Below, one piece after another: positions 8,585-58,140 of a DNA stretch of 64,000 bases. The position numbers were made by a program, and so were the translations under genes. A model generated the notes under the pieces. That model saw only the letters and a list, made by a program, of their open reading frames with translations, was not told where the DNA came from and searched no databases. The number at the start of each line of letters is the position of its first letter. The first letter of the stretch is position 1. The DNA lies in NCBI RefSeq assembly GCF_036321535.1, contig NC_087446.1:248001-312000 (forward strand). Reading direction: 5' to 3'. The DNA comes from Camelus dromedarius. Its lineage: Eukaryota.

Positions 8585-11500
8585 TCAGAGCTCTGTCTGC
8601 AGCGGGTCTGCCGGGGGCAGAGTCAGGATGAATGGGCAGAGGACCCCTTTGGTCCTCAGGGGAAAAGGCTGTAGCTCCTTGGCCTGGAACTGGGCAGTCC
8701 CCTCAAAGACTGTGAAGGTGGCCGTGACCTGGTGGTTGAGGCAGTAGATGGTGTTGCCCAGCACAGCGCAGCGAAGCGGGGCCGGGTCGGGCAGGGGCAG
8801 AGAGGCAGCCCGGCTCCAGGAGCCCGTCACCGTGTTATAACGCATCACCGCAGCGCCCACACCCCGCAGCAGGTCGAAGCGGTACAGGAAGCCCCCCAGG
8901 GCCACCATGTCACTGGACCGCCGGTGGCTGGCACTGTAGGGGCACTCGTCCCACACGTCCTTCGCGGGGCTGTATCTGAGCAAGCGGTAGAAGAGATGGC
9001 CCCCAGTGACATAGATGTCCCCACGGCAGGCCACAGCCTCATGAACCACCGGGAAGGTGCCTGCGGGGAGGGGCGCGCGGGAAGTCCAGGCGTCTGTGCG
9101 CGGGTCGTAGCGCTCCATGCTGTACAGGCACTCGCCCCCAATGGCGTAGAGCAGCCCGTCCAGTGCCACCAGTTTGAGCTGGGCACGGGCCTGCTGCATG
9201 GGCCGCACCTGGCTCCAGATGTTGGTCAGAGGGTTGTAGCAGAAGACCTCGTTGGAGCAGACGGCCTTGGCGCCTGATCCACGGATGCCCCCCGCCAAGA
9301 ACAGGTAGTTGTGCAGGGTGCAGAGACCGCAGCCCCGAAGCGGGACCTCTGGGGGAACCTGGGTCAGGGGCCGCCAGGTGTTCTCTCTGGGGTGGAACAC
9401 GTGCAGGTATGTGTGGAGAGGCGGGGGCACAGGCCCCACCGCAGGAGCCTCGGCAGCACAAGGGTGCCTTGTGAGTCCCGAGCGGCTCACCTGGTAGAGG
9501 CTGGGCAGCACGAGGGCCCCCAGCACAGCCTGGCCCCGGCCAGTGCGAAGGCTCAGGATGCGCTCCCGGTCAGCCCCACTCAGCTGCCGGTAGAGGCTCG
9601 GGTCTCCCAGCACGTGCAGCAGATTGTCACTCATCAAGGCGTAGGTCTCCTGGGCCAGGCCGGGCGCCCCATGCTGCTGGGCGAAGGCCAACACATCCAG
9701 GCAGCTGCCCAGGTCCCGCCACCGTGGCAGAGCCACTGCCGCGGTGGAAGCTGGGTCCCCTGCGGAGGACCTGGGCTTCTGGGGCCCCTCCACCACCCCC
9801 CAGCCCCCAGGCCTCTGCAGAAACACCATGAGTTTTTGGGCCTCCTTCTGCTTCTCCATGAGGACCTCTCTGCTGCCTGCTGGGCTGGGCCTCTCCCCTG
9901 GTGCTTGTGCTTGGTGTTGCCCTGAGGCCACCTGGCTGACCTCCTGCTCAGAGTTCTCGGATATTTCGCACATGCTGCGTTTCCACGGCCGGGGGACAGG
10001 CCTTGTAGCAGGGGATGGTACAGGCCCAGCCTGGGTCTGTGCAGGTGGCCATGAGGGGGCCCTGGGCATTGTGGCTCTGGGCAGCAGCAAGTCTGGACAG
10101 TCCTCCTCAGCTCTATCCCCTCTTGGGCCTGAGGGAGGGACTGTGGTGGGAGACTCCTTGGTCTCCGCACTGCTCTGCTGTGGTTGACCTCCAACCTCAG
10201 CCAGGCCCCCTGTGCCTGGCCCTGTGACCAGTCCGGCTGAGCCTGGCCTGTCCTCACAGCTGTGGACAGCCTCTTCAAGGGGAGAATCAGACTCTTTGTT
10301 CTCAGAGGATGTGGAAGTGCTAGGATCTCTAGGTCTCTCCAGAGCTGCCCTTGGGGCTCTCCTTTGGGGCCTCTCTTGCCTGGGGAAGGGGTGACTCCTA
10401 AGAACCATTGAAATAAGGTTTCCCCAGCTAGTTGAGAACTGCCCCTCCTGGTTGCCCTTGCAGAGAACACTGGGTTCCCGAGATGCTAGCCTTGACCCAC
10501 CAGCAGGTGCAGGGGCTGTGGCTGGGGCTGGAGCTGGGGCTGGGGCAGGGGCTGCAGCTGGGGCTGGTGCGGGGGCAGGGGCTGCAGCTGGGGCTGCAGC
10601 TGGGGCTGGGGGAGAGGCTGCACCTGTGGGAGGGGCTGGGGCTGGAGTGGGCGCTGCAGTTGGGGGAGGGGCTGGCACTGCTCTGAGATTTTCATCCTCT
10701 GCAGGACTCTGGTTAACTCTGAGGGGCAAAGAGTCTGAAGGAGACAAGGTCAGAAGAGTTGGGGATACAGCTAAGAGACCTTGGTGGGGATGTGCTGTGG
10801 ATGGGGAAGCTGAGGGTGGGAGGGGTTTAGAGATGCATGGAGGGGGCAAGACTGAGGGGCCCCGCAAAGGGGTGCAGCTGCGGATGTCTGGAGCTAGCTT
10901 AGCTCTGTCGGAACCACCAGCCACCTGACCTTGCAGGGATCCTCTCCCTTCGATGCTGTGGCCTCCTCGCTTGTTTGTCCCTCCAGGCCCTGAACTGAAG
11001 ACAGCGTCGTCTCCAGCGCCATTAGCCCCAGCTTCTCCCACGTTGCAGGCCTCTGTGGTCCCCTGCCCTTGGGACAAGAGTGGGCGTCCCCACTGTGGCC
11101 CCTCTGGTGATGGGCCAATGGAGCCTGGGGCCTGGCTGAAGCTCCTCATGACCACCTCCCTCCGTGCCCAGGGCCAGCATTCCATGGAGGCTGGGGACCC
11201 CTGAGACTCCCTGGGGGCCAGGGTCCCAGCCTCCCTGCTCTCACCAGCTTTGGCTTCTGAGTCCAGAACTAGGACTGGGGCTGGCTGAGGTCTGCTCTTC
11301 CCACGCCCCCTCTCTAAGACATCCTTCAGGGGCCCAGTCTGTGCAGTGTGTGATGGGGGCAGCTCCCGGAGGAAAGGGAGCCCCTGGGAGCCTGCAGGGA
11401 GGCTACCGGCTGCATCCACAGCATCCCACACGCTCACCACAGTGCCCAGGCAGGCTCTGCCTCCTGAGCTGTGGCCCACCTGCCACCGCCAGCTGCCCGG

Positions 11501-12211
11501 GCCCCTCCCCAGTGAGCCAGGTGACCCTACACCTTGTTGCCAGGGCCTGGTGTCCTGTTCCACTGTGTGGACTGGGGCCTGGTGAGCTGGTGACTTGGCT
11601 CGGATGCCTCCTGCCTTCACCTGCACCTCCACTTCTCTGTCAGGACTCTGAGGGGTGAAGTGTATCAGGAGGGGTGTAGATGCCCCCTGTGCTTTGCTCC
11701 TACCCAGGAGGGCAGCACCTGGCCTGCGAGGCTCCCTTCCTTTTCCTCGGGGGGCTTCCGGGGTGGCATTACCATGCTGCTGTCCCAAGGCCCCTCCACT
11801 GGTCACCTCACCACGTGTGTTGGGTGGAGGTGCGGCTGTGGCAGCCAGACCTCTACCTCCCAGGAGCTCCTGATTTTGTGCCCTTGCTGCCGCCAGGCTC
11901 CCCTGGCCACATCCTGGAGGCTCTGACTTCCCCTGCCCTGAGCTGGGCCCCTTGATGCCACCACTGACCTTGGACTTTGGGGGCAGGGCTGGCCCAGTTC
12001 CTCCCACCTGAGAAGTCTGGGTCCGAGGGGCTGTGGATGCTGGTCCTGCTGCCTCCTGGTCCTGCCCAGAGCCAAACCAGTGCAAGGCCAGTGCGGTGGC
12101 GGCCACCACAGCCAGCGCCAGCAGGGTCAGCACGGCGCCATCCCAGTCGTCGTCCCCGTCCCCGTCCCAGCCCCAGCTGGGGCCGTCAGCCTCTGAGGCA
12201 CCCTGGATCAT
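8585..12211 (-). CDS. KLHDC7B: Kelch domain-containing protein 7B, long single-exon form (1208 aa)
   Basis: Uninterrupted ORF. ATG at 12211 in accATG context (the ORF track's 12223 start is GTG); TGA at 8585-8587. Begins MIQGASEADGPSWGWD..AVLTLLALAVVAATALALHWF, has a central Pro/Ala repeat, and ends in C-terminal Kelch repeats (YLFLAGG, LYAIGG, IYVTGG). Confidence 0.96.
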   Translation of the reverse strand: MIQGASEADGPSWGWDGDGDDDWDGAVLTLLALAVVAATALALHWFGSGQDQEAAGPASTAPRTQTSQVGGTGPALPPKSKVSGGIKGPSSGQGKSEPPGCGQGSLAAARAQNQELLGGRGLAATAAPPPNTRGEVTSGGALGQQHGNATPEAPRGKGREPRRPGAALLGRSKAQGASTPLLIHFTPQSPDREVEVQVKAGGIRAKSPAHQAPVHTVEQDTRPWQQGVGSPGSLGRGPGSWRWQVGHSSGGRACLGTVVSVWDAVDAAGSLPAGSQGLPFLRELPPSHTAQTGPLKDVLERGRGKSRPQPAPVLVLDSEAKAGESREAGTLAPRESQGSPASMECWPWARREVVMRSFSQAPGSIGPSPEGPQWGRPLLSQGQGTTEACNVGEAGANGAGDDAVFSSGPGGTNKRGGHSIEGRGSLQGQVAGGSDRAKLAPDIRSCTPLRGPSVLPPPCISKPLPPSASPSTAHPHQGLLAVSPTLLTLSPSDSLPLRVNQSPAEDENLRAVPAPPPTAAPTPAPAPPTGAASPPAPAAAPAAAPAPAPAPAAAPAPAPAPAPATAPAPAGGSRLASREPSVLCKGNQEGQFSTSWGNLISMVLRSHPFPRQERPQRRAPRAALERPRDPSTSTSSENKESDSPLEEAVHSCEDRPGSAGLVTGPGTGGLAEVGGQPQQSSAETKESPTTVPPSGPRGDRAEEDCPDLLLPRATMPRAPSWPPAQTQAGPVPSPATRPVPRPWKRSMCEISENSEQEVSQVASGQHQAQAPGERPSPAGSREVLMEKQKEAQKLMVFLQRPGGWGVVEGPQKPRSSAGDPASTAAVALPRWRDLGSCLDVLAFAQQHGAPGLAQETYALMSDNLLHVLGDPSLYRQLSGADRERILSLRTGRGQAVLGALVLPSLYQVSRSGLTRHPCAAEAPAVGPVPPPLHTYLHVFHPRENTWRPLTQVPPEVPLRGCGLCTLHNYLFLAGGIRGSGAKAVCSNEVFCYNPLTNIWSQVRPMQQARAQLKLVALDGLLYAIGGECLYSMERYDPRTDAWTSRAPLPAGTFPVVHEAVACRGDIYVTGGHLFYRLLRYSPAKDVWDECPYSASHRRSSDMVALGGFLYRFDLLRGVGAAVMRYNTVTGSWSRAASLPLPDPAPLRCAVLGNTIYCLNHQVTATFTVFEGTAQFQAKELQPFPLRTKGVLCPFILTLPPADPLQTEL
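10495..10680 (-). repeat. Coding GC-rich low-complexity tandem repeat (APAPAA-type) inside KLHDC7B
   Basis: Reiterated ggggct/gcagct/gcaggg hexamers on +, encoding PPAPAAAPAAAPAPAPAPAAAPAPAPAPAPATAPAPA. Confidence 0.85.
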
Positions 12212-15200
12212 GGTCTGGGCCACTGACCCAGCGTGAGGAGCCAGGCAAGAGACTGGAGGCCGCGAGCGCTGAGTGCACCACTCCTGCTTCAGGCCTGGGC
12301 TCTTTCCATGCAGATGGCATCAGTGACGCACCCTGCCCCGCCCAGAGGGCTGCCCAGTTAAGGTGGACCTGGGCTGGGGCAGTGCTCTGCTGTCCTGGGA
12401 GGGGTGGGTCTCTGTGTCTGTGCCTGGGCTTGGGGGTTTGTCAGGAGGCCCCCCGCTGGAGGTGTCAGGAGACAACACAGTCGACAGCAGCTCCAGGAGC
12501 TCAGGCCCCCCACCAAGCTCCTGCCCCTTCTCTTTTTCCGTAGGTTCTAGTGGCAAATGGCAGTGTTTCTCAATACTGTTCGGGCATCCCAGCCAACTGG
12601 CTTCTGCCTAACAGACCTCACACCCCCAAGCTCGTCCCCCACGCCCCGTGTCCCTCCTCTGAGCTCGGGTCCAGCCTCAGGGGGCTCCGGCAGGGAAGAG
12701 TTACCCACAGGAAGATGTTCTCTGTAGTTTCAGCAACATGATGCGGCCCTGATGAAATTACCAGAAACCTGAGGAGACCATTCCACTGTGAGCTAACAGG
12801 AGAGGAGGGGGCTGGTCTCCCTGAGGAGGGCGTGCAGGGGTCAGGGGCATCTGTCCGCCCCAGCACAGGGATGGGCTGCTGAGGAAGTTGTGCCCTCCCG
12901 TCACCACATGCGTGACGTGGAGGCTAACACTGTTCCCCTCCCAGGGTCCACAGCAGAGCCCGAGCGGCCAAGGCTGAGCCTCCCACACCCTCGTCCAGCA
13001 GCCCCTGGACCTTCTTACCCCGAGTTCAGCAGAGATATCGAGAGTGAAAAATGAACGAAATAAAGAAAATCCAAAAGTTGTTTTTCCCTCCTCATTGGCC
13101 TGGCCTCTTGGGCCTCCCCCTGTGCCCTCTGGAAAGTCTTGACTGCCAGGTGCCACTCACACCGGTGGGGAACCCGGCCGGCTCCCATTGCCGTCACTGG
13201 GCCCTTCGGAAAGCCTGGGAGTCATCCTGGGTGTCTCATCTCAGTTCTCGGCCTTCCCTCATCCAAACTCCTCCTCGCCAGGACTCGGGCCCCTCCAGGC
13301 CTGTGTGCAGATGCTTCTGGGGGTGCATACGCCTGGCCTCCTCTCAGTGCTTGGTTTCCCAGGGACAAGCCCTGTCTCCTGCATCTTCTTCTCACTTAAT
13401 CTGAGGAGTAAGTCAGTCTTGGGACAGATGCCAGATAGGGCCCAGACATGAAAAAGAGCCTGGAGTTCCTGGGACAGAGGCAGGCCCCCCACAACACATG
13501 CTTGTTTCTTCTTCTGGGACACAGGTGCTCCCTGACGCAGGCAGCAGGCTGGCCAAGGCACACCCCTGGCTCCCAGCCTGGGCTCTGCTTATCCTCAGGT
13601 ATCTCACCTACCTGCTCCTCCCAACACCCCCTGCCCAGTGTATCAGATGGCAGTAAAGGATGGAAGGGGCCCTGCCTTAAGGTGGACCTCAAGCTGGAGG
13701 CCAGCTTTCTGGACACTGCCCTGATTCTGTCCCTGTCCCAGGCTCTGCCTCCTGGTTAAGTTTGGGATCCAAAGACCTTGAGAGGATGGAGATGCACCTC
13801 CCCATTGGCCATGTGTCTCCCTGCAGCATCACCTGTCTGAGTGCCAGGCTGCTGTCAGAGAGCAGAAGTGTCCACTTGAGATAGCTTAGGACATCCTGGT
13901 GGGGAGATCACCCTAACCAACTTCACAAGGTGCAAGGACCGTGATGGGTCCTAGAGACACACAGGTGACCAAGGAAGGGTCTAGTCCCCTTCTCTACGGA
14001 GAGAAAACACCTTACCTTGTCAAAACCCAGACTGAGGGCAACCTCAGCCCCGCATGGAGAAACTCACTACTGGGAAGGTGACTAGAGACATGTTACCTCC
14101 TGAAATAGTGGGACTTCTGCCGTCTTAACTTTCCAGAGAGAGTAAAAATGTGGCACTGACGGAAAGGTGACAGAACTTCAGAAGCACACAGGATCACCCA
14201 CGGAAACTGTGAGACATAAGTAATTGTCCTGGTTATGCTATGATGGCATAAATATCACAAATTCCCATCGAGGTAAAAATTAAAATCAAGAAAGTGGGTC
14301 CTGGGAACGTCCAAACTTTAGTGGCCTCCTTAGAGCTCCTTTTCCGATTGCCTGCTGAGGCAGGAATCCTGTTCCAGTCTATACAAGGAAGAGAGAGGGA
14401 CCTGTGCCTATGTACCTGAAGATACTGTTTCCTCAGAGACAACACAAGCAGAGCAGGAGTGGAGGCAGTCACCTGCCTGCCAGCAGCCAACACCAATGGA
14501 CACTGGGGGCCTGGGAGGTGGGGAAATCCATCCACATATGAGCTGGTCCACTGCAGCACCCACAAGAAAAAGAACCCCCACTGCCTGGTCACTGAACCCC
14601 AACAAAGCTGGGCGGTACCCTGGCCCCCACTGTGCCCTTCCTGAAACATATACTGGAGGAAAAGCCTAGTGAAATGAAGACGTAATTCCACGTGGAGTGC
14701 TAAATACAAGTGAACAGCTGATATAAATAAGACAGTAGACAGCAGCAAACCCCGCCTAATGTAGAGTTTCTCTATTGGAATTTTTTAAAGGTAGGAAATA
14801 CATAATCAGAAATGATATAAAACAAGGACTATAATATATAATCATATTTATGCTAAAAGCATATATTATTTTTATATATATGTTAACAAATCTAGAATAA
14901 TGTTTAAGGCTTAAAAAATATAAATCTCAGATTTAATAATTACATCCAACAGGGAATACCGCTTAAGGAATCTGGCTGATGTGGGAAAAGGCTTATGCAA
15001 AAACGTTTTTAAAAAGGACAATGCAATATGATTTATAATGGAAAAAAATTAGAACATGTAAGCATTCAACAATATGGGAATGATTAGGAAAACATGCTCA
15101 TGACTTTAAAGTGTGGTATTGAAAATGAATTTAAATAGTTATTAATAATATGGCTGAAAAGCTCAATACAACTATTAACAGGGAGTCTTAGAAGAGGCAA

Positions 15201-19789: not shown

Positions 19790-19945
19790 NNNNNNNNNNN
19801 NNNNNNNNNNNNNNNNNNNNNNNNNNNNNNNNNNNNNNNNNNNNNNNNNNNNNNNNNNNNNNNNNNNNNNNNNNNNNNNNNNNNNNNNNNNNNNNNNNNN
19901 NNNNNNNNNNNNNNNNNNNNNNNNNNNNNNNNNNNNNNNNNNNNN
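19790..19945. other. Assembly gap (N run); further gaps at 56939-57067 and 57284-57548
   Basis: Runs of n. Confidence 1.
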
Positions 19946-30686: not shown

Positions 30687-32792
<2,106 letters not shown>

Positions 32793-32859
32793 TCGGCCGG
32801 GCGGGCGCGGCCCCACAAATGTTTTTCTTAAAAGATTCGGGAGCCAGCAGCGTGTCGCC

Positions 32860-33105
32860 TTCCCTCTGCTTGCGGCGCGGCGGGCGGGCAAGAGAGGCCG
32901 CAAGCGGGCCCTCGTGATTGGTCGGGATACCCGCCCCTCCAAGGCGGTGATTGGCCCAGAGCCCCGCCTGTCCGCGAGGCCCCGCCCCTCCGTGGATCTG
33001 GCCGGAGGCGCCATCCCGCCGCTCCCACGCTGTGGCCGCCGGCAAGACAGAGAGGAACCCGCTAGGATTCGAAAGAAGACGGGCTAGGGCCTCTGTGCAG
33101 GACAG
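32860..33105 (+). promoter_or_regulatory. Retained TYMP-position CpG promoter and non-coding exon 1
   Basis: CpG-dense. Two inverted CCAAT boxes (ATTGG 32917-32921 and 32950-32954), several CCGCCC GC boxes, and an intact donor cag|GTACGG at 33106. Confidence 0.55.
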
Positions 33106-33289
33106 GTACGGACCGGGGTCAGTTGTGAGACCGAGATGTGGGAGCCAGACATGGAGACATGCACACGGGCGACACAGACACAGGACTGAGGGGACTACAC
33201 GAGAGAAAAACGGGAACCGGGTCGGGACAAGTGAGCCTGGCTGCAGTGACACGGACACAGGGCGGCGACAGGTTCCAAGTGTGTCGCAG

Positions 33290-35865
33290 CCCGGAGTAGT
33301 TGCGGACCCCTGTCCCCACCTGCCCCAGTTGAATCTGCTGAACTCTCCCAGGGAGGGAGCCGGAGCCCAAGCAACTGCCTACTGAAGTCAGGGGTTTCGT
33401 GAGTGCCGTCCTGGAAGGCACAGGGCGCGCAAATCCATGCGTGGCGACGGCTGGCCGCCCCTGACTCCGACCCAAAGGTCAGGCCCAGAGACTGCCTGCC
33501 CCCGGCGACGCCATAGCGCCCCACCACTGCCACTGCCACTCAGGATAACCTACTGCAGGGGGAACGCCCTCCCTCCTTGTGCTGCCTACACCACTGTACC
33601 CACGCCTAGGGGCCATGATCTTGCCAACCGCCTGCGAGGCATGGATCTGGTGGAGACTGCAGCGCTGACCCGTCCTGGGCAAGTCTGGGCAGCAGCTGGA
33701 GTGGCCTGGTGCCTATAGCTCGGGGACAAACGTGCCCTGAGGCAGAGTCTTGGCACCTGCCCTGCCTGCCTGTGGCTGCAAGGTTAAAAGATGCCTCCTC
33801 TCAAGACCAGAAACTCTGACCTCAAAGAGGTCAGCAGCCCAATTCAAGCCTGGCCCAAACAGGACCCCAGGACAGAACCTGAATCTCCCTTCCCATCAAC
33901 CCCCAAGAACAGGAACAAGTCTTCCAGCTCTCCCTCCTAGATTCCGCAGGCAGGACTCCCAAAGGAAGAGCCGGTACTGCTACCCCTCCACCCCCAGACT
34001 TGTGCCTCAAGCGAGAGGTACTTGCCTCCTCCCCCACTGACACCCCCATCCCAAACCAGGACAATCTGTTTTCAGTTCCCTCTCCAGTTGAATACCCACT
34101 ACACTGCTTAGTAAATATTTAACTCCAGTTGAAGTTCTAACCAGGGAAGGTGAGGAGAAATGTGGGGGTGGGGATGTGACTATGCAGGTGTACTCAGCAT
34201 CCCTGTCCAGCATGTACCAATGATCAGTGGACATGGTCTGGGGCACATGGGGAGCACCTTGGATATTTCTGGATTTAGTGTCACCTAGAGCCCAGAGCAG
34301 GTACAGGTGGGCCACTGATGGGTCATTGACCTGGGTTATTGATGGATACATTGGCCAGACTCTCTAGAAGATCATTAGTGAGGATATTGACCAGTTATTC
34401 ATGGCGCCTAGGACTTTGATCAAGATCATCAATGGAAATTTGATTGAAGTCATTAATAGGGACTTTGTAAAATACTGACAGGCCTCTGATTAATCATTAA
34501 TGAGCCACAGGACATTGATCAATATTCTGGACGAGTCATTAGTGAGGACTTATCAGAATCATTCCTAAGTCACTGGTCATGATTTTGAACATTTTGTCAA
34601 GGTTGCTGATGAGTTTTCAGTCGGGGTCAGTGATGAGGTTACTGATCAGAGGCCACTGAAGGTCACCAAGAGCCCTTATGCGGGGGGGGGGGGGGGGGGC
34701 TGGCCAGATGCAAGGGCTGCCGGGGCAAGTAGCTGCTGTATTGTGGGTCAGAGCAGGAAGCTGGTTCTTGCAGATGGAATCCTGTATGAAGCAAGAGATG
34801 TAACAGACACTGTCGACAGCCTGCCACTCATCACAGGTGACCTCACCCCAGACTCCACCTCCTGCATGTTAAAGACCCCAAGCTGTGAACACACACAATC
34901 ACCGGTGATTTGACCCAAACCCAGGGTCAGTGTATGCTCATCACAGGATACCTGATCACCCACTCAAGAGGGTGACCTGACTGATGCACAACCTGTCATC
35001 CCATCACATAGGGAACTTTACCCCATGCTCTGGATCCCTGACCCCTCATGACAGACCGGAGATTCAGCATCCTCCACATCTCCTGGGAAGCTCCAGGATC
35101 TCCATCATCTCCAGACCCGTAGCCTCCCCCACAGCCCCCATCCTCAGTGAGAAGGCGACAGACAGCCTGTCTGCTCTGGTGGTAGACAGGAAGTTCAGGG
35201 AAACCGCAGTCGTCCCTATTCAGCCACAGGCGTGGGAGCAGGCAAGCACCAGTGCCTTCTGGAGCCAGTGTGGCCTCTCCGTAGGGGTCGCCGTGTGGTT
35301 GTGTCCTCTCTGATGGTGTGGATCTCATGTGGCCCCAAACTCCCCTTCATAACTTGGGCAGCCTGGTCCCCACGAACCTTTTAGTCCTCCCAGCAGCCCT
35401 GTCTCACCCTGCCTCTGCTGGGACTGGACTCCGTGCTGGCATTCCTCCTTCTTCAGCTTTATCTGAGCAAGGCTGATCTGGTCTGGGGAAACCCTCCCGC
35501 CCGGGCCAGGTACAAGGCTTTCCTGACCCCCACCGCTTAAGTCAAGCACACTGCCTGCTTCAGGTCTCTCCCGTCCCCTCCCAAGCCTTCTGTGATCCCC
35601 TCACTCCACGGGAACTGGCAACCAAGGATGCATCAAGGACTGGAGTCTGACGACACGCAAGATAATGGGCGGGTCCACGCTGAGCCGTGTCTCCGCAGGT
35701 TGGCGCGGGGCGGTTGCTCTGACCGCCAAGGACAACCCCAGCGTAGGCCACTCCCTGGAGTGGAGAAGGCGCTGCTGTGCGGAGGCCCCCGGGCCTGCGG
35801 ACCCAGTCACCCGTCACCAGGCTCGGTGAGGGGACTGGTAGAGGGGCACCCGCTCTGGCTCAGCC
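33290..35865 (+). pseudogene. TYMP: Unitary (unprocessed) pseudogene of thymidine phosphorylase
   Basis: Exon remnants in order: ex2 33290-33436 (PEPKQLP..EVRGFVSAV; no ATG; donor reads AT at 33437); ex3 33610-33782 (RLRGMDLVET..; frameshifts; TAG 33716-33718); ex4 34214-34300 (VPMISGHGLGHMGSTLD-ISGFSVT*SPEQ; TAG 34286-34288; acceptor CAT); ex5 34708-34836 ([34 protein letters not shown]; 1-nt deletion); ex6 35135-~35251 (PILSEKATDSLSALVVDRKF); ex7 35699-35825 (ALTAKDNP..VGHSLE..EKALLC); start of ex8 ~35845-35865 (LWLS). Located between ODF3B and SCO2, as TYMP is in human. Confidence 0.93.
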
Positions 35866-36099
35866 CTACGCCCAGAGACCTCCGTCCGTCCAGTAGCCCA
35901 TGCCCCTCCCTTCCTGAGCCCAGCTTTTCACCCCCAGCCCCCCGCGCCCGCGAGCTGGCCGACACGCGGCAACGAACCCCGAGAGGCGCTCATTGGTGCG
36001 GGTGCCCGTGCGGCTCCACGGGGGCCGGGAGCAAGAAGGTGGAAACCCCGGGCGAGTGCAGACCGCGCCGGGCGAGGCGTGGCCGCCGAGGATGGGCGG

Positions 36100-36200
36100 G
36101 GCTTCCTCGCACCGCCCTCCGGCACGTGACTTCTGACGGGGGGAGTCCTGCACCTTTGGCGCATGCGCACGGCCCGGCGCCCGCTGGCTCCACGCTCGTC
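36100..36200 (+). promoter_or_regulatory. SCO2 core promoter region (CpG island)
   Basis: Palindromic NRF-1 site GCGCATGCGC 36159-36168, E-box CACGTG 36123-36128 and GC boxes, ~1.2 kb upstream of the SCO2 coding exon. Strong donor cag|GTAAGG at 36612 is a candidate end of a non-coding exon. Confidence 0.6.
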
Positions 36201-37406
36201 TGCGCGAGCGCGACGCCGTTAACGCATACGCCCAGGGACCGAGCAGGGCGGGCGCCAAGCTCTGCTTCCTGGGTCTCATCCACAGGCACGCGGCATCGAC
36301 GCCGGCGTCCGGAGGACCTGGAAGGCCACCCAGCGCGGCGCGTTCCTGGAGGGCGCTCTGGAGGGGGCTCCTTGAGAAGAGGGGCCTTCTGGAGGAGAGG
36401 GGCCCTGGAAACGTCCACAGGCTGCCTTCGCTTGCAGGCCCATTTCATGCACCGCTTACAGCGCACTTTGCAAAGGAGGAAGCTGATGTAGACACTAAGG
36501 GACGTGTCCAAGGTCATCCAGCCCAGAGCCCAAGCCCAGGAACCTTTGGACCGGGCAGAGGCCGGACATTTAGTAGTCTTCGAGAAGGCCCTTCCAGCAG
36601 CAGCGGAGCAGGTAAGGCGGAGTCCTAAGACCTCCTCCTAGCAAACCTCCAGAGGACCCTGAGAAAGGGTCGGAGGTCACCGAAGCAACAGCAGAGCGTG
36701 GGCCGCCAGCCCAGAGCTGCTGTCGGATACCCGGCTGTGGACAAGGTAGGCTCCAGACAAGTGGAAACCTTGTTTCCCTTCCAGGTGACCACCACCCAGA
36801 AAGGTTCAGGGTGGAAGGGGCGGCGGCGGAGCGGCATCAGGAGGTAACTGCAGACTGGGTGCGGGTGACGGGGGGTTTCGGCTGAGCCTGGGGAGGGAAC
36901 CAAAGCTCCATGGTTGGAGCGGTCCTCAAGAGAAAGGCTGCAGAAGGGTCGGAGTCAGTCTTTGGGGATTGAAGCCAGAGACTCACCCACTTCCTGTCAA
37001 GAAATGGGAGTTTATTGCACACAGACTAATATGCTCAGGAATCCCAACAAGCATGCACTTGGAATGCTTTCAGTCAGCTCACTCAGACACAGGCAGCGCT
37101 GGGCTAGGCTGGTTAGAGCTGCAGGGGCAGGCCAGCCAGCAGCAGGACCAGGGGGCAGGGGCCAGGTGGGATGAGATGGATGAGGGTCTCAGGCTGGAGG
37201 ACAAGAGGAACAGGCAGGGACATTTGATAACACCTAGGCCAGAGTGCGAAGTTTCAGAGGTGAAGCACTTCTGAGCCCAGCTGAGCCCGTGTGGGGTTGG
37301 TCCTTCAGATGGTGGCGAGTCTCCCCAGAATGATGGAGGATGACCCAGGAGGCCGAGGCACCTCCTGGTTCCAAAACCTTTGCTCTTTTCCAGGAGCACC
37401 AGGTCC

Positions 37407-38207
37407 ATGCTGCTGCTGGCTCGGGCACCCAAGGCTTGGCACGGGCTCTCTCAGCTCAAGCCTCCTGCCCTCCCCAGGACCCCAGGAGGCAAGGCCCCAC
37501 ATGTGAGGTGCCGGCTCCTGTCAAGGCAGGGCCCTGTGGAGGCTGGCAGGCAGGGCCGGCCCCAGGGTCCTGGGCTACGAACTAGGCTGCTGATCACAGC
37601 CTTGTTTGGGGCTGGGCTAGGTGGGGCCTGGCTGGCTGCAAGGGCAGAAAAGGAGCAGCGGCGGCAGCGACAGCGGACAGAGGCACTGCATCAGGCTGCT
37701 GTGGGCCAGGGTGACTTCAGCCTGCTGGACCACTGGGGCCAGGCTCGCTGCAAAGCCGACTTCCGGGGCCAGTGGGTGCTAATGTACTTTGGCTTCACTC
37801 ACTGCCCCGACATCTGCCCAGATGAGCTGGAGAAGCTGGTGCAGGTGGTGAGGCAGCTGGAGACAGAGCCTGGCCTGCCCCCCGTGCAGCCCCTCTTTAT
37901 CACCGTGGACCCTGAGCGGGATGACGTGGCCGCCATGGCCCGCTACGTGCAGGACTTCCACCCAAGGCTGCTGGGCCTGACTGGCTCAGCTGAGCAGATT
38001 GCCGAGGTCAGCCGCAGCTACCGCGTGTACTACAGCGCTGGCCCCAAGGACGAGGACCAGGATTACATTGTGGACCACTCCATCGCCATCTATTTGCTCA
38101 GCCCTGACGGCCTCTTCACAGACTATTACAGCAGGGCCAGGTCAGCTGAGCAGATTGCAGACAGCGTGCGGCGCCACATGGCTGCCTTCCGCAGCGTCCT
38201 GCACTGA
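37407..38207 (+). CDS. SCO2: Cytochrome c oxidase assembly protein SCO2 (266 aa; whole CDS in one exon)
   Basis: Acceptor ttttccag ends at 37393 and ATG is at 37407. [11 protein letters not shown].. targeting peptide, TM segment [18 protein letters not shown], copper-binding CPDIC and conserved His in [10 protein letters not shown]; TGA 38205-38207. Confidence 0.98.
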
Positions 38208-56499: not shown

Positions 56500-58140
56500 G
56501 GGGTTATTGTTTTGTTTTCTGTAACAGCCTTCCTGAGATATAATTCATATGCCTACAATTCACCCACTCACAGGGCACAATTCAGCAGATACAGGGTTGT
56601 GCATCCATCACCGTAATCAATTGTAAAGCCTTTTTATCAACTCGAGAAGAATGCCTGTTCCATGTAGCAGGCATCTTCCGCCCTGCTCCTTCCCATGCCC
56701 TAGGCAACAACTAATCTACTTTTTGTCCCCATGGAGTTACCTATTCTGGACACTATATGTAAATAGAATCATACAATTTGTGCCCTTTTATGTCTGGCTT
56801 CTTTTGCTTAGCATAACGTTTTCAGAGTATGTCCGTATAGTAGCAGGTGCCAGAACTTCGTTCCTTTTTATGGCTGAATAGTATTCCATTATATGTTGAT
56901 ACCGCATTTTGTTCATCCATTGATCCATCAATAGACATNNNNNNNNNNNNNNNNNNNNNNNNNNNNNNNNNNNNNNNNNNNNNNNNNNNNNNNNNNNNNN
57001 NNNNNNNNNNNNNNNNNNNNNNNNNNNNNNNNNNNNNNNNNNNNNNNNNNNNNNNNNNNNNNNNNNNGATTTTATGGTTAACTTTTTGAGGGGCCACCTA
57101 ACTTTTCCACAGCAGCTGCACCCTTTCACATTCCCTCCAGCAGTGTCCCAGGGCTCCTGTTTCTTCACATCCTTACTGACACTTGTTATTTTCCCTTTTT
57201 TGACAACATCCATCTCTTTATAGTGTCCTTTGACACACAAAAGTTTTTAGTGTTTATAAAGTCCAATTAATTTTTTTTTATTGNNNNNNNNNNNNNNNNN
57301 NNNNNNNNNNNNNNNNNNNNNNNNNNNNNNNNNNNNNNNNNNNNNNNNNNNNNNNNNNNNNNNNNNNNNNNNNNNNNNNNNNNNNNNNNNNNNNNNNNNN
57401 NNNNNNNNNNNNNNNNNNNNNNNNNNNNNNNNNNNNNNNNNNNNNNNNNNNNNNNNNNNNNNNNNNNNNNNNNNNNNNNNNNNNNNNNNNNNNNNNNNNN
57501 NNNNNNNNNNNNNNNNNNNNNNNNNNNNNNNNNNNNNNNNNNNNNNNNCTGACTGCATATGTAAGGGCTCTGTTACGGAATGTCTGTTCTGGTCCATGGG
57601 TCTGTACATCTGTCTTTATGCCAGCGTCACACTGTTTGGATTACTGTAGCTTTGTAGTAAGTTTTGAAGTTGGGAAGTCTGAGTCTGCCAGCTTTATTAT
57701 TCTTTTTCAAGACTTTTTGACTATTTGGGGTCCCTTGAGATTTTAGAATGGATTTTTCTTTTATTTCTGCAAAAAAGTCCCATTGGGATTTTGACAAAGA
57801 TTGCATCGAATCTGTAGATCACTTTGATAGTACAGTTGACCCTTGAGCAATGCCAAGGTTAGTGGTGCCGACCTCCATGCAGTCAAAAATCCAAGTATAA
57901 GCTTAGAGTTGGCCATCCACATCCAAGGTTCTGCATCCATGGATTCAACCAGCCAAGGATTGTGTAGTACGGTGGTGGTAGCTAGTGGGGAAAATCCACA
58001 TATAAGTGGACCCTTGCAGTTCAAATTGGCATTGTTCAGGGTCAACTGTATCGTCTTAACAATGGTAAGTCTCCCAATCCATGTACTTTTATTTTCTCTC
58101 TTCTATTTGAATCTAGCCGGTTTTAGCAATAACTCTCAAG
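56500..58140 (-). mobile_element. L1M(B)-type LINE-1 fragment containing two assembly gaps
   Basis: Reverse-strand L1 3'UTR/ORF2 phrases; MEYYSAIKRNE in the translation. Confidence 0.8.
57833..58048. mobile_element. 216-bp Tigger2-derived MITE
   Basis: TIRs cagttgacccttgagcaatg / cattgttcagggtcaactg; TA duplications at 57831-57832 and 58049-58050. Confidence 0.85.

What the first reader, a model, noticed from the sequence alone, without database searches (positions are those of the whole stretch)
33290..35865. Thymidine phosphorylase (TYMP) is a dead unitary pseudogene in this lineage
Seen: seven exon remnants in correct order at the syntenic position, each damaged. Exon 2 has no ATG, an internal deletion and an AT donor; exon 3 has frameshifts and TAG 33716; exon 4 has a CAT acceptor, a 12-nt deletion and TAG 34286; exon 5 is 129 nt (1 short); exons 6 and 7 have indels. 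All six neighbouring genes are intact, so this is not assembly noise. Established: TYMP deficiency causes MNGIE in humans through thymidine/deoxyuridine accumulation and mtDNA damage; in mice, uridine phosphorylase 1 also cleaves thymidine. Inference: this animal tolerates a natural knockout of a human disease gene, and the number of lesions implies an ancient loss. Whether this loss is already published needs a literature check.
Basis: partly seen in the sequence, partly recalled or inferred. Interest (0 to 1): 0.85.

Follow-up and report, generated by a model that had tools for sequence, protein, structure and literature searches.

The report
Dead TYMP gene in camel
The camel's thymidine phosphorylase gene (TYMP, the human MNGIE disease gene) really is a decayed wreck at its normal chromosomal place, but its loss in the common ancestor of camels, whales and ruminants was already published in 2019, so this is a correct but known finding.

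Summary
Seven TYMP exon remnants (non-coding exon 1 and coding exons 2-7) lie in order on the + strand at 33005-35825, between ODF3B and an intact SCO2. The ATG is lost and the exon 2 donor is AT. TAG codons sit at 33716 and 34286. The exon 4 acceptor reads AT, and exon 4 has a 12-nt deletion. Exon 5 is 129 nt instead of 130. Exons 6 and 7 carry indels.

The window is a camel, probably dromedary. The same lesions occur in independent assemblies of Bactrian camel, wild camel and alpaca, and in contigs of a separate DNA run. Many are shared with a whale and a deer, including the exon 8-10 deletion junction (whale). So the gene died in the stem of Cetartiodactyla. The exon remnants are no better conserved than the introns.

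Sharma & Hiller 2019 (PMC7671337) report this loss, with alpaca and Bactrian camel in their dataset, and also propose UPP1 compensation. Verdict: a real unitary pseudogene, already known.

One minor extra: an RNA contig joins the retained exon 7 donor to SCO2 5'UTR exons.

The parts
33005..33106 (+). Remnant of non-coding TYMP exon 1, with a GT donor at 33107
   Evidence: A public wild-camel gene model (P0002) uses this stretch as an exon (97% match). The donor sequence was read. Versus whale and deer it is no more conserved than the introns.
33299..33436 (+). TYMP coding exon 2 remnant: start codon lost, five frameshifting deletions, donor AT
33610..33782 (+). TYMP exon 3 remnant: four deletions, one of 20 nt removing most of the conserved TGGVGDK codons; TAG at 33716
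34214..34300 (+). TYMP exon 4 remnant: acceptor AT, 12-nt deletion, TAG at 34286
34708..34836 (+). TYMP exon 5 remnant, the best preserved: 129 nt, 1-nt deletion after 34730, both splice sites kept
35135..35249 (+). TYMP exon 6 remnant: 3' end and donor deleted
35699..35825 (+). TYMP exon 7 remnant: deletions of 22, 9, 1 and 10 nt, 6-nt insertion, both splice sites kept; one RNA contig uses the donor
35845..36064 (+). Stretch that stands in place of about 1.5 kb of horse sequence holding coding exons 8-10 (deletion scar)
   Evidence: camelids and Kogia align with each other straight across the junction
36286..36611 (+). SCO2 5'UTR exon, whose acceptor also receives the TYMP exon 7 donor in one RNA contig
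   Evidence: joints; splice sites read
36785..36843 (+). SCO2 5'UTR exon
37407..38207 (+). Intact SCO2 coding sequence (266 aa), the downstream neighbour and synteny anchor

Best explanation
This is the unitary pseudogene of thymidine phosphorylase (TYMP) in a camel, probably the dromedary. It sits at the ancestral position between ODF3B and SCO2. The gene was inactivated once, in the common ancestor of Cetartiodactyla. It has drifted neutrally since then and picked up further camelid- and Camelus-specific lesions. No enzyme can be made: the start codon is gone, every coding exon remnant is disabled in some way (frameshift, in-frame stop, or lost splice site), most of the codons of the conserved TGGVGDK motif are deleted, and the C-terminal third (exons 8-10) is missing. 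Inferred, not shown here: the animal tolerates the loss because thymidine and deoxyuridine are cleared another way, most plausibly by a uridine phosphorylase (UPP1) that also cleaves thymidine, as in the mouse.
For: - Homology and order of the remnants.
- Lesions mapped against the intact horse gene.
- Synteny KLHDC7B-ODF3B-[TYMP]-SCO2-NCAPH2-LMF2.
- Identical lesions in C. bactrianus, C. ferus and alpaca assemblies. Contigs of DNA run X11 match 32700-37500 with no difference.
- Lesions shared with Kogia and Cervus: ATG loss, 22-nt deletion in E2, 20-nt deletion in E3, destroyed E4 acceptor, absence of exons 8-10. Shared with Kogia only, because Cervus lacks exon 7: the 22-, 9- and 1-nt deletions in E7 and the exon 8-10 deletion junction.
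- A seal has different lesions.
- Exon remnants are 79-91% identical to Kogia and introns 78-88%, against 90% for the SCO2 CDS.
- No TYMP gene is called between ODF3B and SCO2 in Kogia, Cervus, alpaca, Bactrian camel or seal, whereas one is called in horse.
- None of the named proteins among the 120 best TYMP matches in the protein collection comes from a cetartiodactyl or a carnivore.
- Published: Sharma & Hiller 2019, PMC7671337.
Against: The rest of this genome could not be searched, so a functional duplicate or retrocopy elsewhere is excluded only indirectly (and the paper's own check for duplicates). UPP1 compensation is taken from the literature and was not tested for camels. RNA libraries contain the region, and one contig shows a splice from the exon 7 donor, so the locus may not be transcriptionally silent.
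Confidence: 0.95

Rival explanations
1. The remnant has been taken over as non-coding upstream exons of SCO2. Transcripts that start in or read through the dead TYMP gene splice from its retained donors (exon 7, perhaps exon 1) into the SCO2 5'UTR exons, so part of the wreck now serves SCO2 expression. This would add to the pseudogene reading rather than replace it.
For: Contig 15 of RNA run X19 (442 nt) joins 35825|36286, 36611|36785 and 36843|37394, all GT..AG. RNA contigs of X15 and X17 run unbroken from 34.7 kb into SCO2. The exon 5 and exon 7 splice sites are kept. A public C. ferus model joins exon 1 (33005-33106) to the SCO2 acceptor.
Against: The joint rests on 28 letters in one contig of a metatranscriptome, which the tool flags as weak. 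Contig depth is a whole-contig mean. The unspliced remnant is at depth 2-5 against 147-289 for the SCO2 exons. No RNA contig covers 32700-33343. The promoter, exon 1 and exon 7 are no more conserved than the introns. The public models may be prediction artefacts.
Confidence: 0.2
2. The lesions are assembly or sequencing errors, and the gene is intact in the animal.
For: A run of about 20 G at 34682-34702 breaks contigs, so the locus is not trivial to assemble.
Against: The same lesions occur in four independent camelid assemblies and in contigs of another DNA run. Many are shared with whale and deer. There are dozens of lesions plus a deletion of more than 1 kb.
Confidence: 0.01
3. This copy is dead, but a functional TYMP copy exists elsewhere in the camel genome.
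For: None found. The whole genome could not be searched here.
Against: No cetartiodactyl TYMP protein is among the named proteins of the 120 best matches in a 5.8-billion-protein collection that includes annotated camel genomes. Sharma & Hiller report checking that no functional duplicate exists in the loss species.
Confidence: 0.03

Closest known systems
TYMP loss in Cetartiodactyla (Sharma & Hiller 2019, NAR Genomics and Bioinformatics, PMC7671337; cow loss first noted in the cattle genome paper, Elsik et al. 2009, as cited there)
   Same: Same gene and same clade. Alpaca and Bactrian camel were in their 62-mammal set. Shared inactivating mutations and exon deletions were taken as a single ancestral loss. 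UPP1 with broader specificity was proposed as the reason the loss is tolerated.
   Different: The dromedary itself was not in their species list. The paper's figures are not held, so a lesion-by-lesion comparison was not possible. The lesion map here was made independently against horse.
[quoted passage not shown]
   Same: The same gene decays at the same syntenic place. Here the seal Mirounga shows remnants between ODF3B and SCO2.
   Different: The lesions differ. The seal keeps the exon 3 stretch that all cetartiodactyls lack, lacks exon 7, and keeps parts of exons 8-10. This fits a separate loss.
Functional mammalian thymidine phosphorylase (horse locus L001; bat protein P0144; solved human enzyme 1UOU/2WK6)
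   Same: Exon order, exon sizes and 74-91% nucleotide identity of the remnants to horse exons. Residues 180-218 are recognisable.
   Different: No open frame, no start codon, most of the conserved TGGVGDK codons deleted, and no C-terminal domain. No Pfam domain is detectable in any stop-free piece.

Membership tests
Unitary pseudogene of TYMP | Sequence descends from TYMP exons, in the original order and orientation | tested here: met
   tblastn residues 7-303 in order; PDB match E 6e-12; blastn to horse exons 2-7, E 1e-7 to 1e-47
Unitary pseudogene of TYMP | Lies at the ancestral syntenic position, not a retrocopy (introns kept) | tested here: met
   Between ODF3B (SHIPPO repeats) and SCO2, with KLHDC7B and LMF2 further out. 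Introns align to horse, whale and deer.
Unitary pseudogene of TYMP | Disabling mutations: lost start, frameshifts, in-frame stops, splice-site loss, exon deletion | tested here: met
Unitary pseudogene of TYMP | Lesions are real, not assembly noise | tested here: met
   Four camelid assemblies share them. DNA run X11 contigs show 0 differences over 32700-37500. These are contigs, not raw reads.
Unitary pseudogene of TYMP | Loss of selective constraint on the coding exons | tested here: met
   Exon remnants are 79-91% identical to Kogia and introns 78-88%; SCO2 CDS is 90%.
Unitary pseudogene of TYMP | No functional copy elsewhere in the genome | tested here: inconclusive
   No cetartiodactyl TYMP among the named proteins of the 120 best matches. 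The paper reports no duplicates. The genome itself could not be searched here.
Pyrimidine-nucleoside phosphorylase family (Pfam PF02885, PF00591, PF07831) | Detectable family domains in the translated product | tested here: not met
   None of ten stop-free pieces hits any Pfam family at E up to 1. The PF07831 region (exons 8-10) is deleted. This is expected for a decayed gene.

The most novel reading that the evidence does not exclude
Sixty million years after its death, the TYMP wreck still supplies splice donors, and perhaps a promoter, to SCO2. In camelids some SCO2 transcripts would begin in the dead gene and splice from the exon 7 remnant (35825) into the SCO2 5'UTR exon at 36286. That would be a pseudogene recycled as alternative upstream exons of the neighbouring mitochondrial gene.
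Probability: 0.2. Interest if true: 0.3.

Novelty: already known. Interest (0 to 1): 0.15.

Why it matters
TYMP deficiency causes the human disease MNGIE, so natural knockouts are of interest for how thymidine is otherwise cleared. That point, the clade-wide loss and the UPP1 explanation were published in 2019. It gives an independent lesion map for a (probable) dromedary. It shows that the exon 8-10 deletion junction and several small deletions are shared between camelids and a whale. It shows that the exon remnants have evolved like introns. It also gives a weak hint of read-through splicing into SCO2.

Tried and rejected
- A Pfam scan of ten stop-free pieces found nothing. The pieces are too short and too decayed, so PDB phmmer and tblastn were used instead.
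- No full-length TYMP could be reached by word search from fragments. A profile-free phmmer of the exon 5 piece against 1.84 billion representatives gave the intact bat-like TYMP P0144.
- The hippo SCO2 look-up found no contig. Pig was not sampled.
The promoter is 82% and exon 1 is 73% identical to Kogia, against 78-88% for introns. There is also no RNA contig over 32700-33343. A hole in contig data proves nothing, though.
- Assembly error was rejected.
- A keyword search of earlier scan notes for TYMP and UPP1 found nothing.
- A literature search for camel-specific TYMP work found nothing beyond Sharma & Hiller.

Full report
**What is there**

The stretch 33.0-35.9 kb carries recognisable but wrecked pieces of thymidine phosphorylase on the + strand. 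A stop-free piece covering the exon 5 remnant matches solved human thymidine phosphorylase (1UOU, 2WK6) residues 180-218 at E about 6e-12. A phmmer search with that piece against 1.84 billion representative proteins returned intact mammalian enzymes, from which I took P0144 (487 aa) as the reference. It is 97% identical to the Rousettus protein.

tblastn of P0144 against the whole window finds residues 7-303 in order at 33307-35802. It finds nothing convincing for residues 304-487 and nothing elsewhere in the window. Pfam finds no domain in any stop-free piece, which fits heavy decay.

**Which animal, and the neighbourhood**

The downstream ORF at 37407-38207 is an intact SCO2 of 266 aa. It is identical to the C-terminal 266 residues of a Camelus dromedarius SCO2 entry. 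It differs by one residue (H95R) from the C. bactrianus SCO2 (also H95R, with or without Q146R, in the two C. ferus entries), and by five residues from alpaca. The window is therefore a camel, most likely the dromedary.

Domain hits place a Kelch protein (KLHDC7B-like) at 8585-12223 on the minus strand. SHIPPO-repeat ODF3B lies just upstream at about 31.4-32.8 kb, and an LMF-family gene at about 52 kb. NCAPH2 is called tail-to-tail after SCO2 in the sister assemblies. This is the ancestral order ODF3B-TYMP-SCO2-NCAPH2-LMF2, as in horse, where a TYMP gene is called in the same slot.

**Lesion map**

I fetched the SCO2 neighbourhoods of seven species through their SCO2 proteins: horse, Kogia, Cervus, C. 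ferus, alpaca, C. bactrianus and the seal Mirounga. The horse gene gives an uninterrupted 493-aa product from nine coding exons with canonical splice sites. Aligning each horse exon to the window gives:

| Exon | Window coordinates | Length vs horse | Lesions |
|---|---|---|---|
| E2 | 33299-33436 | 138 of 223 nt | ATG is GTT; deletions of 16, 22, 11, 31 and 5 nt; donor GT changed to AT |
| E3 | 33610-33782 | 173 of 203 nt | deletions of 1, 2, 7 and 20 nt (the last removes most of the conserved TGGVGDK codons); TAG at 33716 |
| E4 | 34214-34300 | 87 of 99 nt | acceptor AG changed to AT; 12-nt deletion; TAG at 34286 |
| E5 | 34708-34836 | 129 of 130 nt | 1-nt deletion after 34730 |
| E6 | 35135-35249 | 115 of 119 nt | 3' end and donor deleted |
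| E7 | 35699-35825 | 127 of 163 nt | deletions of 22, 9, 1 and 10 nt; 6-nt insertion |

Homology to horse stops at horse 7206 (window 35844) and resumes at horse 8691 (window 36065). About 1.5 kb holding those three exons is replaced by about 220 nt.

**Real, not noise**

C. bactrianus, C. ferus and alpaca assemblies show the same exon remnants with the same indels. The exception is a few lineage-specific changes; for example, TAG 34286 is TGG in alpaca. Contigs of a separate DNA run (X11) match 32700-37500 with no difference or gap. They break only at the run of about 20 G at 34682-34702 in intron 4. Fourteen DNA runs hold at least 99% of the sampled words.

**Age of the loss**

Lesions shared by camelids, the whale Kogia and the deer Cervus:
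- loss of the ATG
- the 22-nt deletion in E2, and part of the next E2 deletion
- the 20-nt deletion in E3
- a destroyed E4 acceptor
- absence of exons 8-10

Lesions shared by camelids and Kogia only (Cervus lacks exon 7):
- the 22-, 9- and 1-nt deletions in E7
- the exon 8-10 deletion junction, across which camelids and Kogia align with each other without a break

Camelids are the basal branch of Cetartiodactyla (established phylogeny, my knowledge). The gene was therefore already dead in the stem of that order.

The seal has a different set of lesions. It keeps the E3 stretch that cetartiodactyls lack, lacks E7, and keeps parts of E8-E10. That fits an independent loss in carnivores.

Since the camel-whale split, the exon remnants (79-91% identity) have diverged like the introns (78-88%). 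The SCO2 and ODF3B coding sequences stand at 90% and 88%. That is the signature of neutral drift.

**Copy elsewhere?**

I could not search the whole genome. Among the named proteins of the 120 best TYMP matches in a 5.8-billion-protein collection there are bats, perissodactyls, primates, rodents, lagomorphs, eulipotyphlans, afrotherians, xenarthrans, marsupials, a monotreme, reptiles and birds. There is no cetartiodactyl and no carnivore. No TYMP gene is called at the locus in Kogia, Cervus, alpaca, Bactrian camel or seal.

**Literature**

- TYMP is lost in six lineages comprising 21 mammals.
[quoted passage not shown] - The species table includes alpaca and Bactrian camel.
- They note that the cow loss was reported earlier, in the cattle genome paper.
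- They checked synteny, the absence of duplicates, and read support.
- They propose that a UPP1 with broader specificity, as in mouse, makes TYMP dispensable.

Searches for camel-specific work found nothing further.

**How it works**

Shown here: no enzyme can be produced from this locus. Inferred from the literature and not tested here: thymidine and deoxyuridine are cleared by another route, most plausibly UPP1.

**Side observation: transcripts**

RNA libraries contain the region. In two runs, a contig runs unspliced from 34.7 kb to 36611, splices to 36785 and continues into SCO2. In a third run (X19), low-depth unspliced contigs (depth 2-5) cover most of 33364-35572. One 442-nt contig in X19 joins 35825|36286, 36611|36785 and 36843|37394. 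All of these are canonical GT..AG sites.

So the retained exon 7 donor can be spliced onto SCO2's 5'UTR exons. The evidence is thin. The joint rests on 28 letters on one side in one metatranscriptome contig, and the reported depth is a whole-contig mean. No RNA contig covers the exon 1 and promoter region. The promoter, exon 1 and exon 7 are no better conserved than the introns.

Public camel gene models that fuse ODF3B exons or TYMP exon 1 to SCO2 (P0232, P0002) may reflect such read-through or may be prediction artefacts.

**Verdict**

The finding is already known, so interest is low.

Noticed in passing
window 35825|36286, 36611|36785, 36843|37394: One RNA contig (run X19) joins the retained donor of the TYMP exon 7 remnant to SCO2 5'UTR exons and on to the SCO2 coding exon. 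All junctions are GT..AG. Two other RNA runs have contigs running unspliced from 34.7 kb into SCO2.
   Followed up: partly
window 34682-34702: A run of about 20 G in TYMP intron 4, present in all camelids compared. Both DNA and RNA contigs break there.
   Followed up: no
window 31403-32571, 33005-33106 and 37394 onward: Public camel gene models give N-terminally extended SCO2 proteins. The dromedary model (430 aa) fuses ODF3B exons to SCO2. The wild-camel model (391 aa) adds a far upstream exon (about 21.1 kb), ODF3B exons and TYMP exon 1. These are either read-through transcripts or annotation artefacts caused by the dead gene between them.
   Followed up: partly
That is no better than the introns. 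No RNA contig covers them in three RNA runs.
   Followed up: partly
L009 5700-8600 (Mirounga leonina): The seal TYMP remnant has a lesion set different from the cetartiodactyl one: exon 7 missing and parts of exons 8-10 kept. This fits the published independent loss in Carnivora.
   Followed up: partly
window 8585-12223 (-): A single 1212-aa open frame with C-terminal Kelch repeats, the KLHDC7B-like neighbour, in a very GC-rich stretch.
   Followed up: no
window 37689-37691 (SCO2 codon 95): SCO2 has His95 here and in the dromedary entry, but Arg95 in Bactrian camel, wild camel and alpaca. It is a handy marker that the window is dromedary-like.
   Followed up: no
window 19790-19945, 56939-57067, 57284-57548: Three runs of N (assembly gaps or masking). 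They were left untouched, and none lies in the TYMP region.
   Followed up: no
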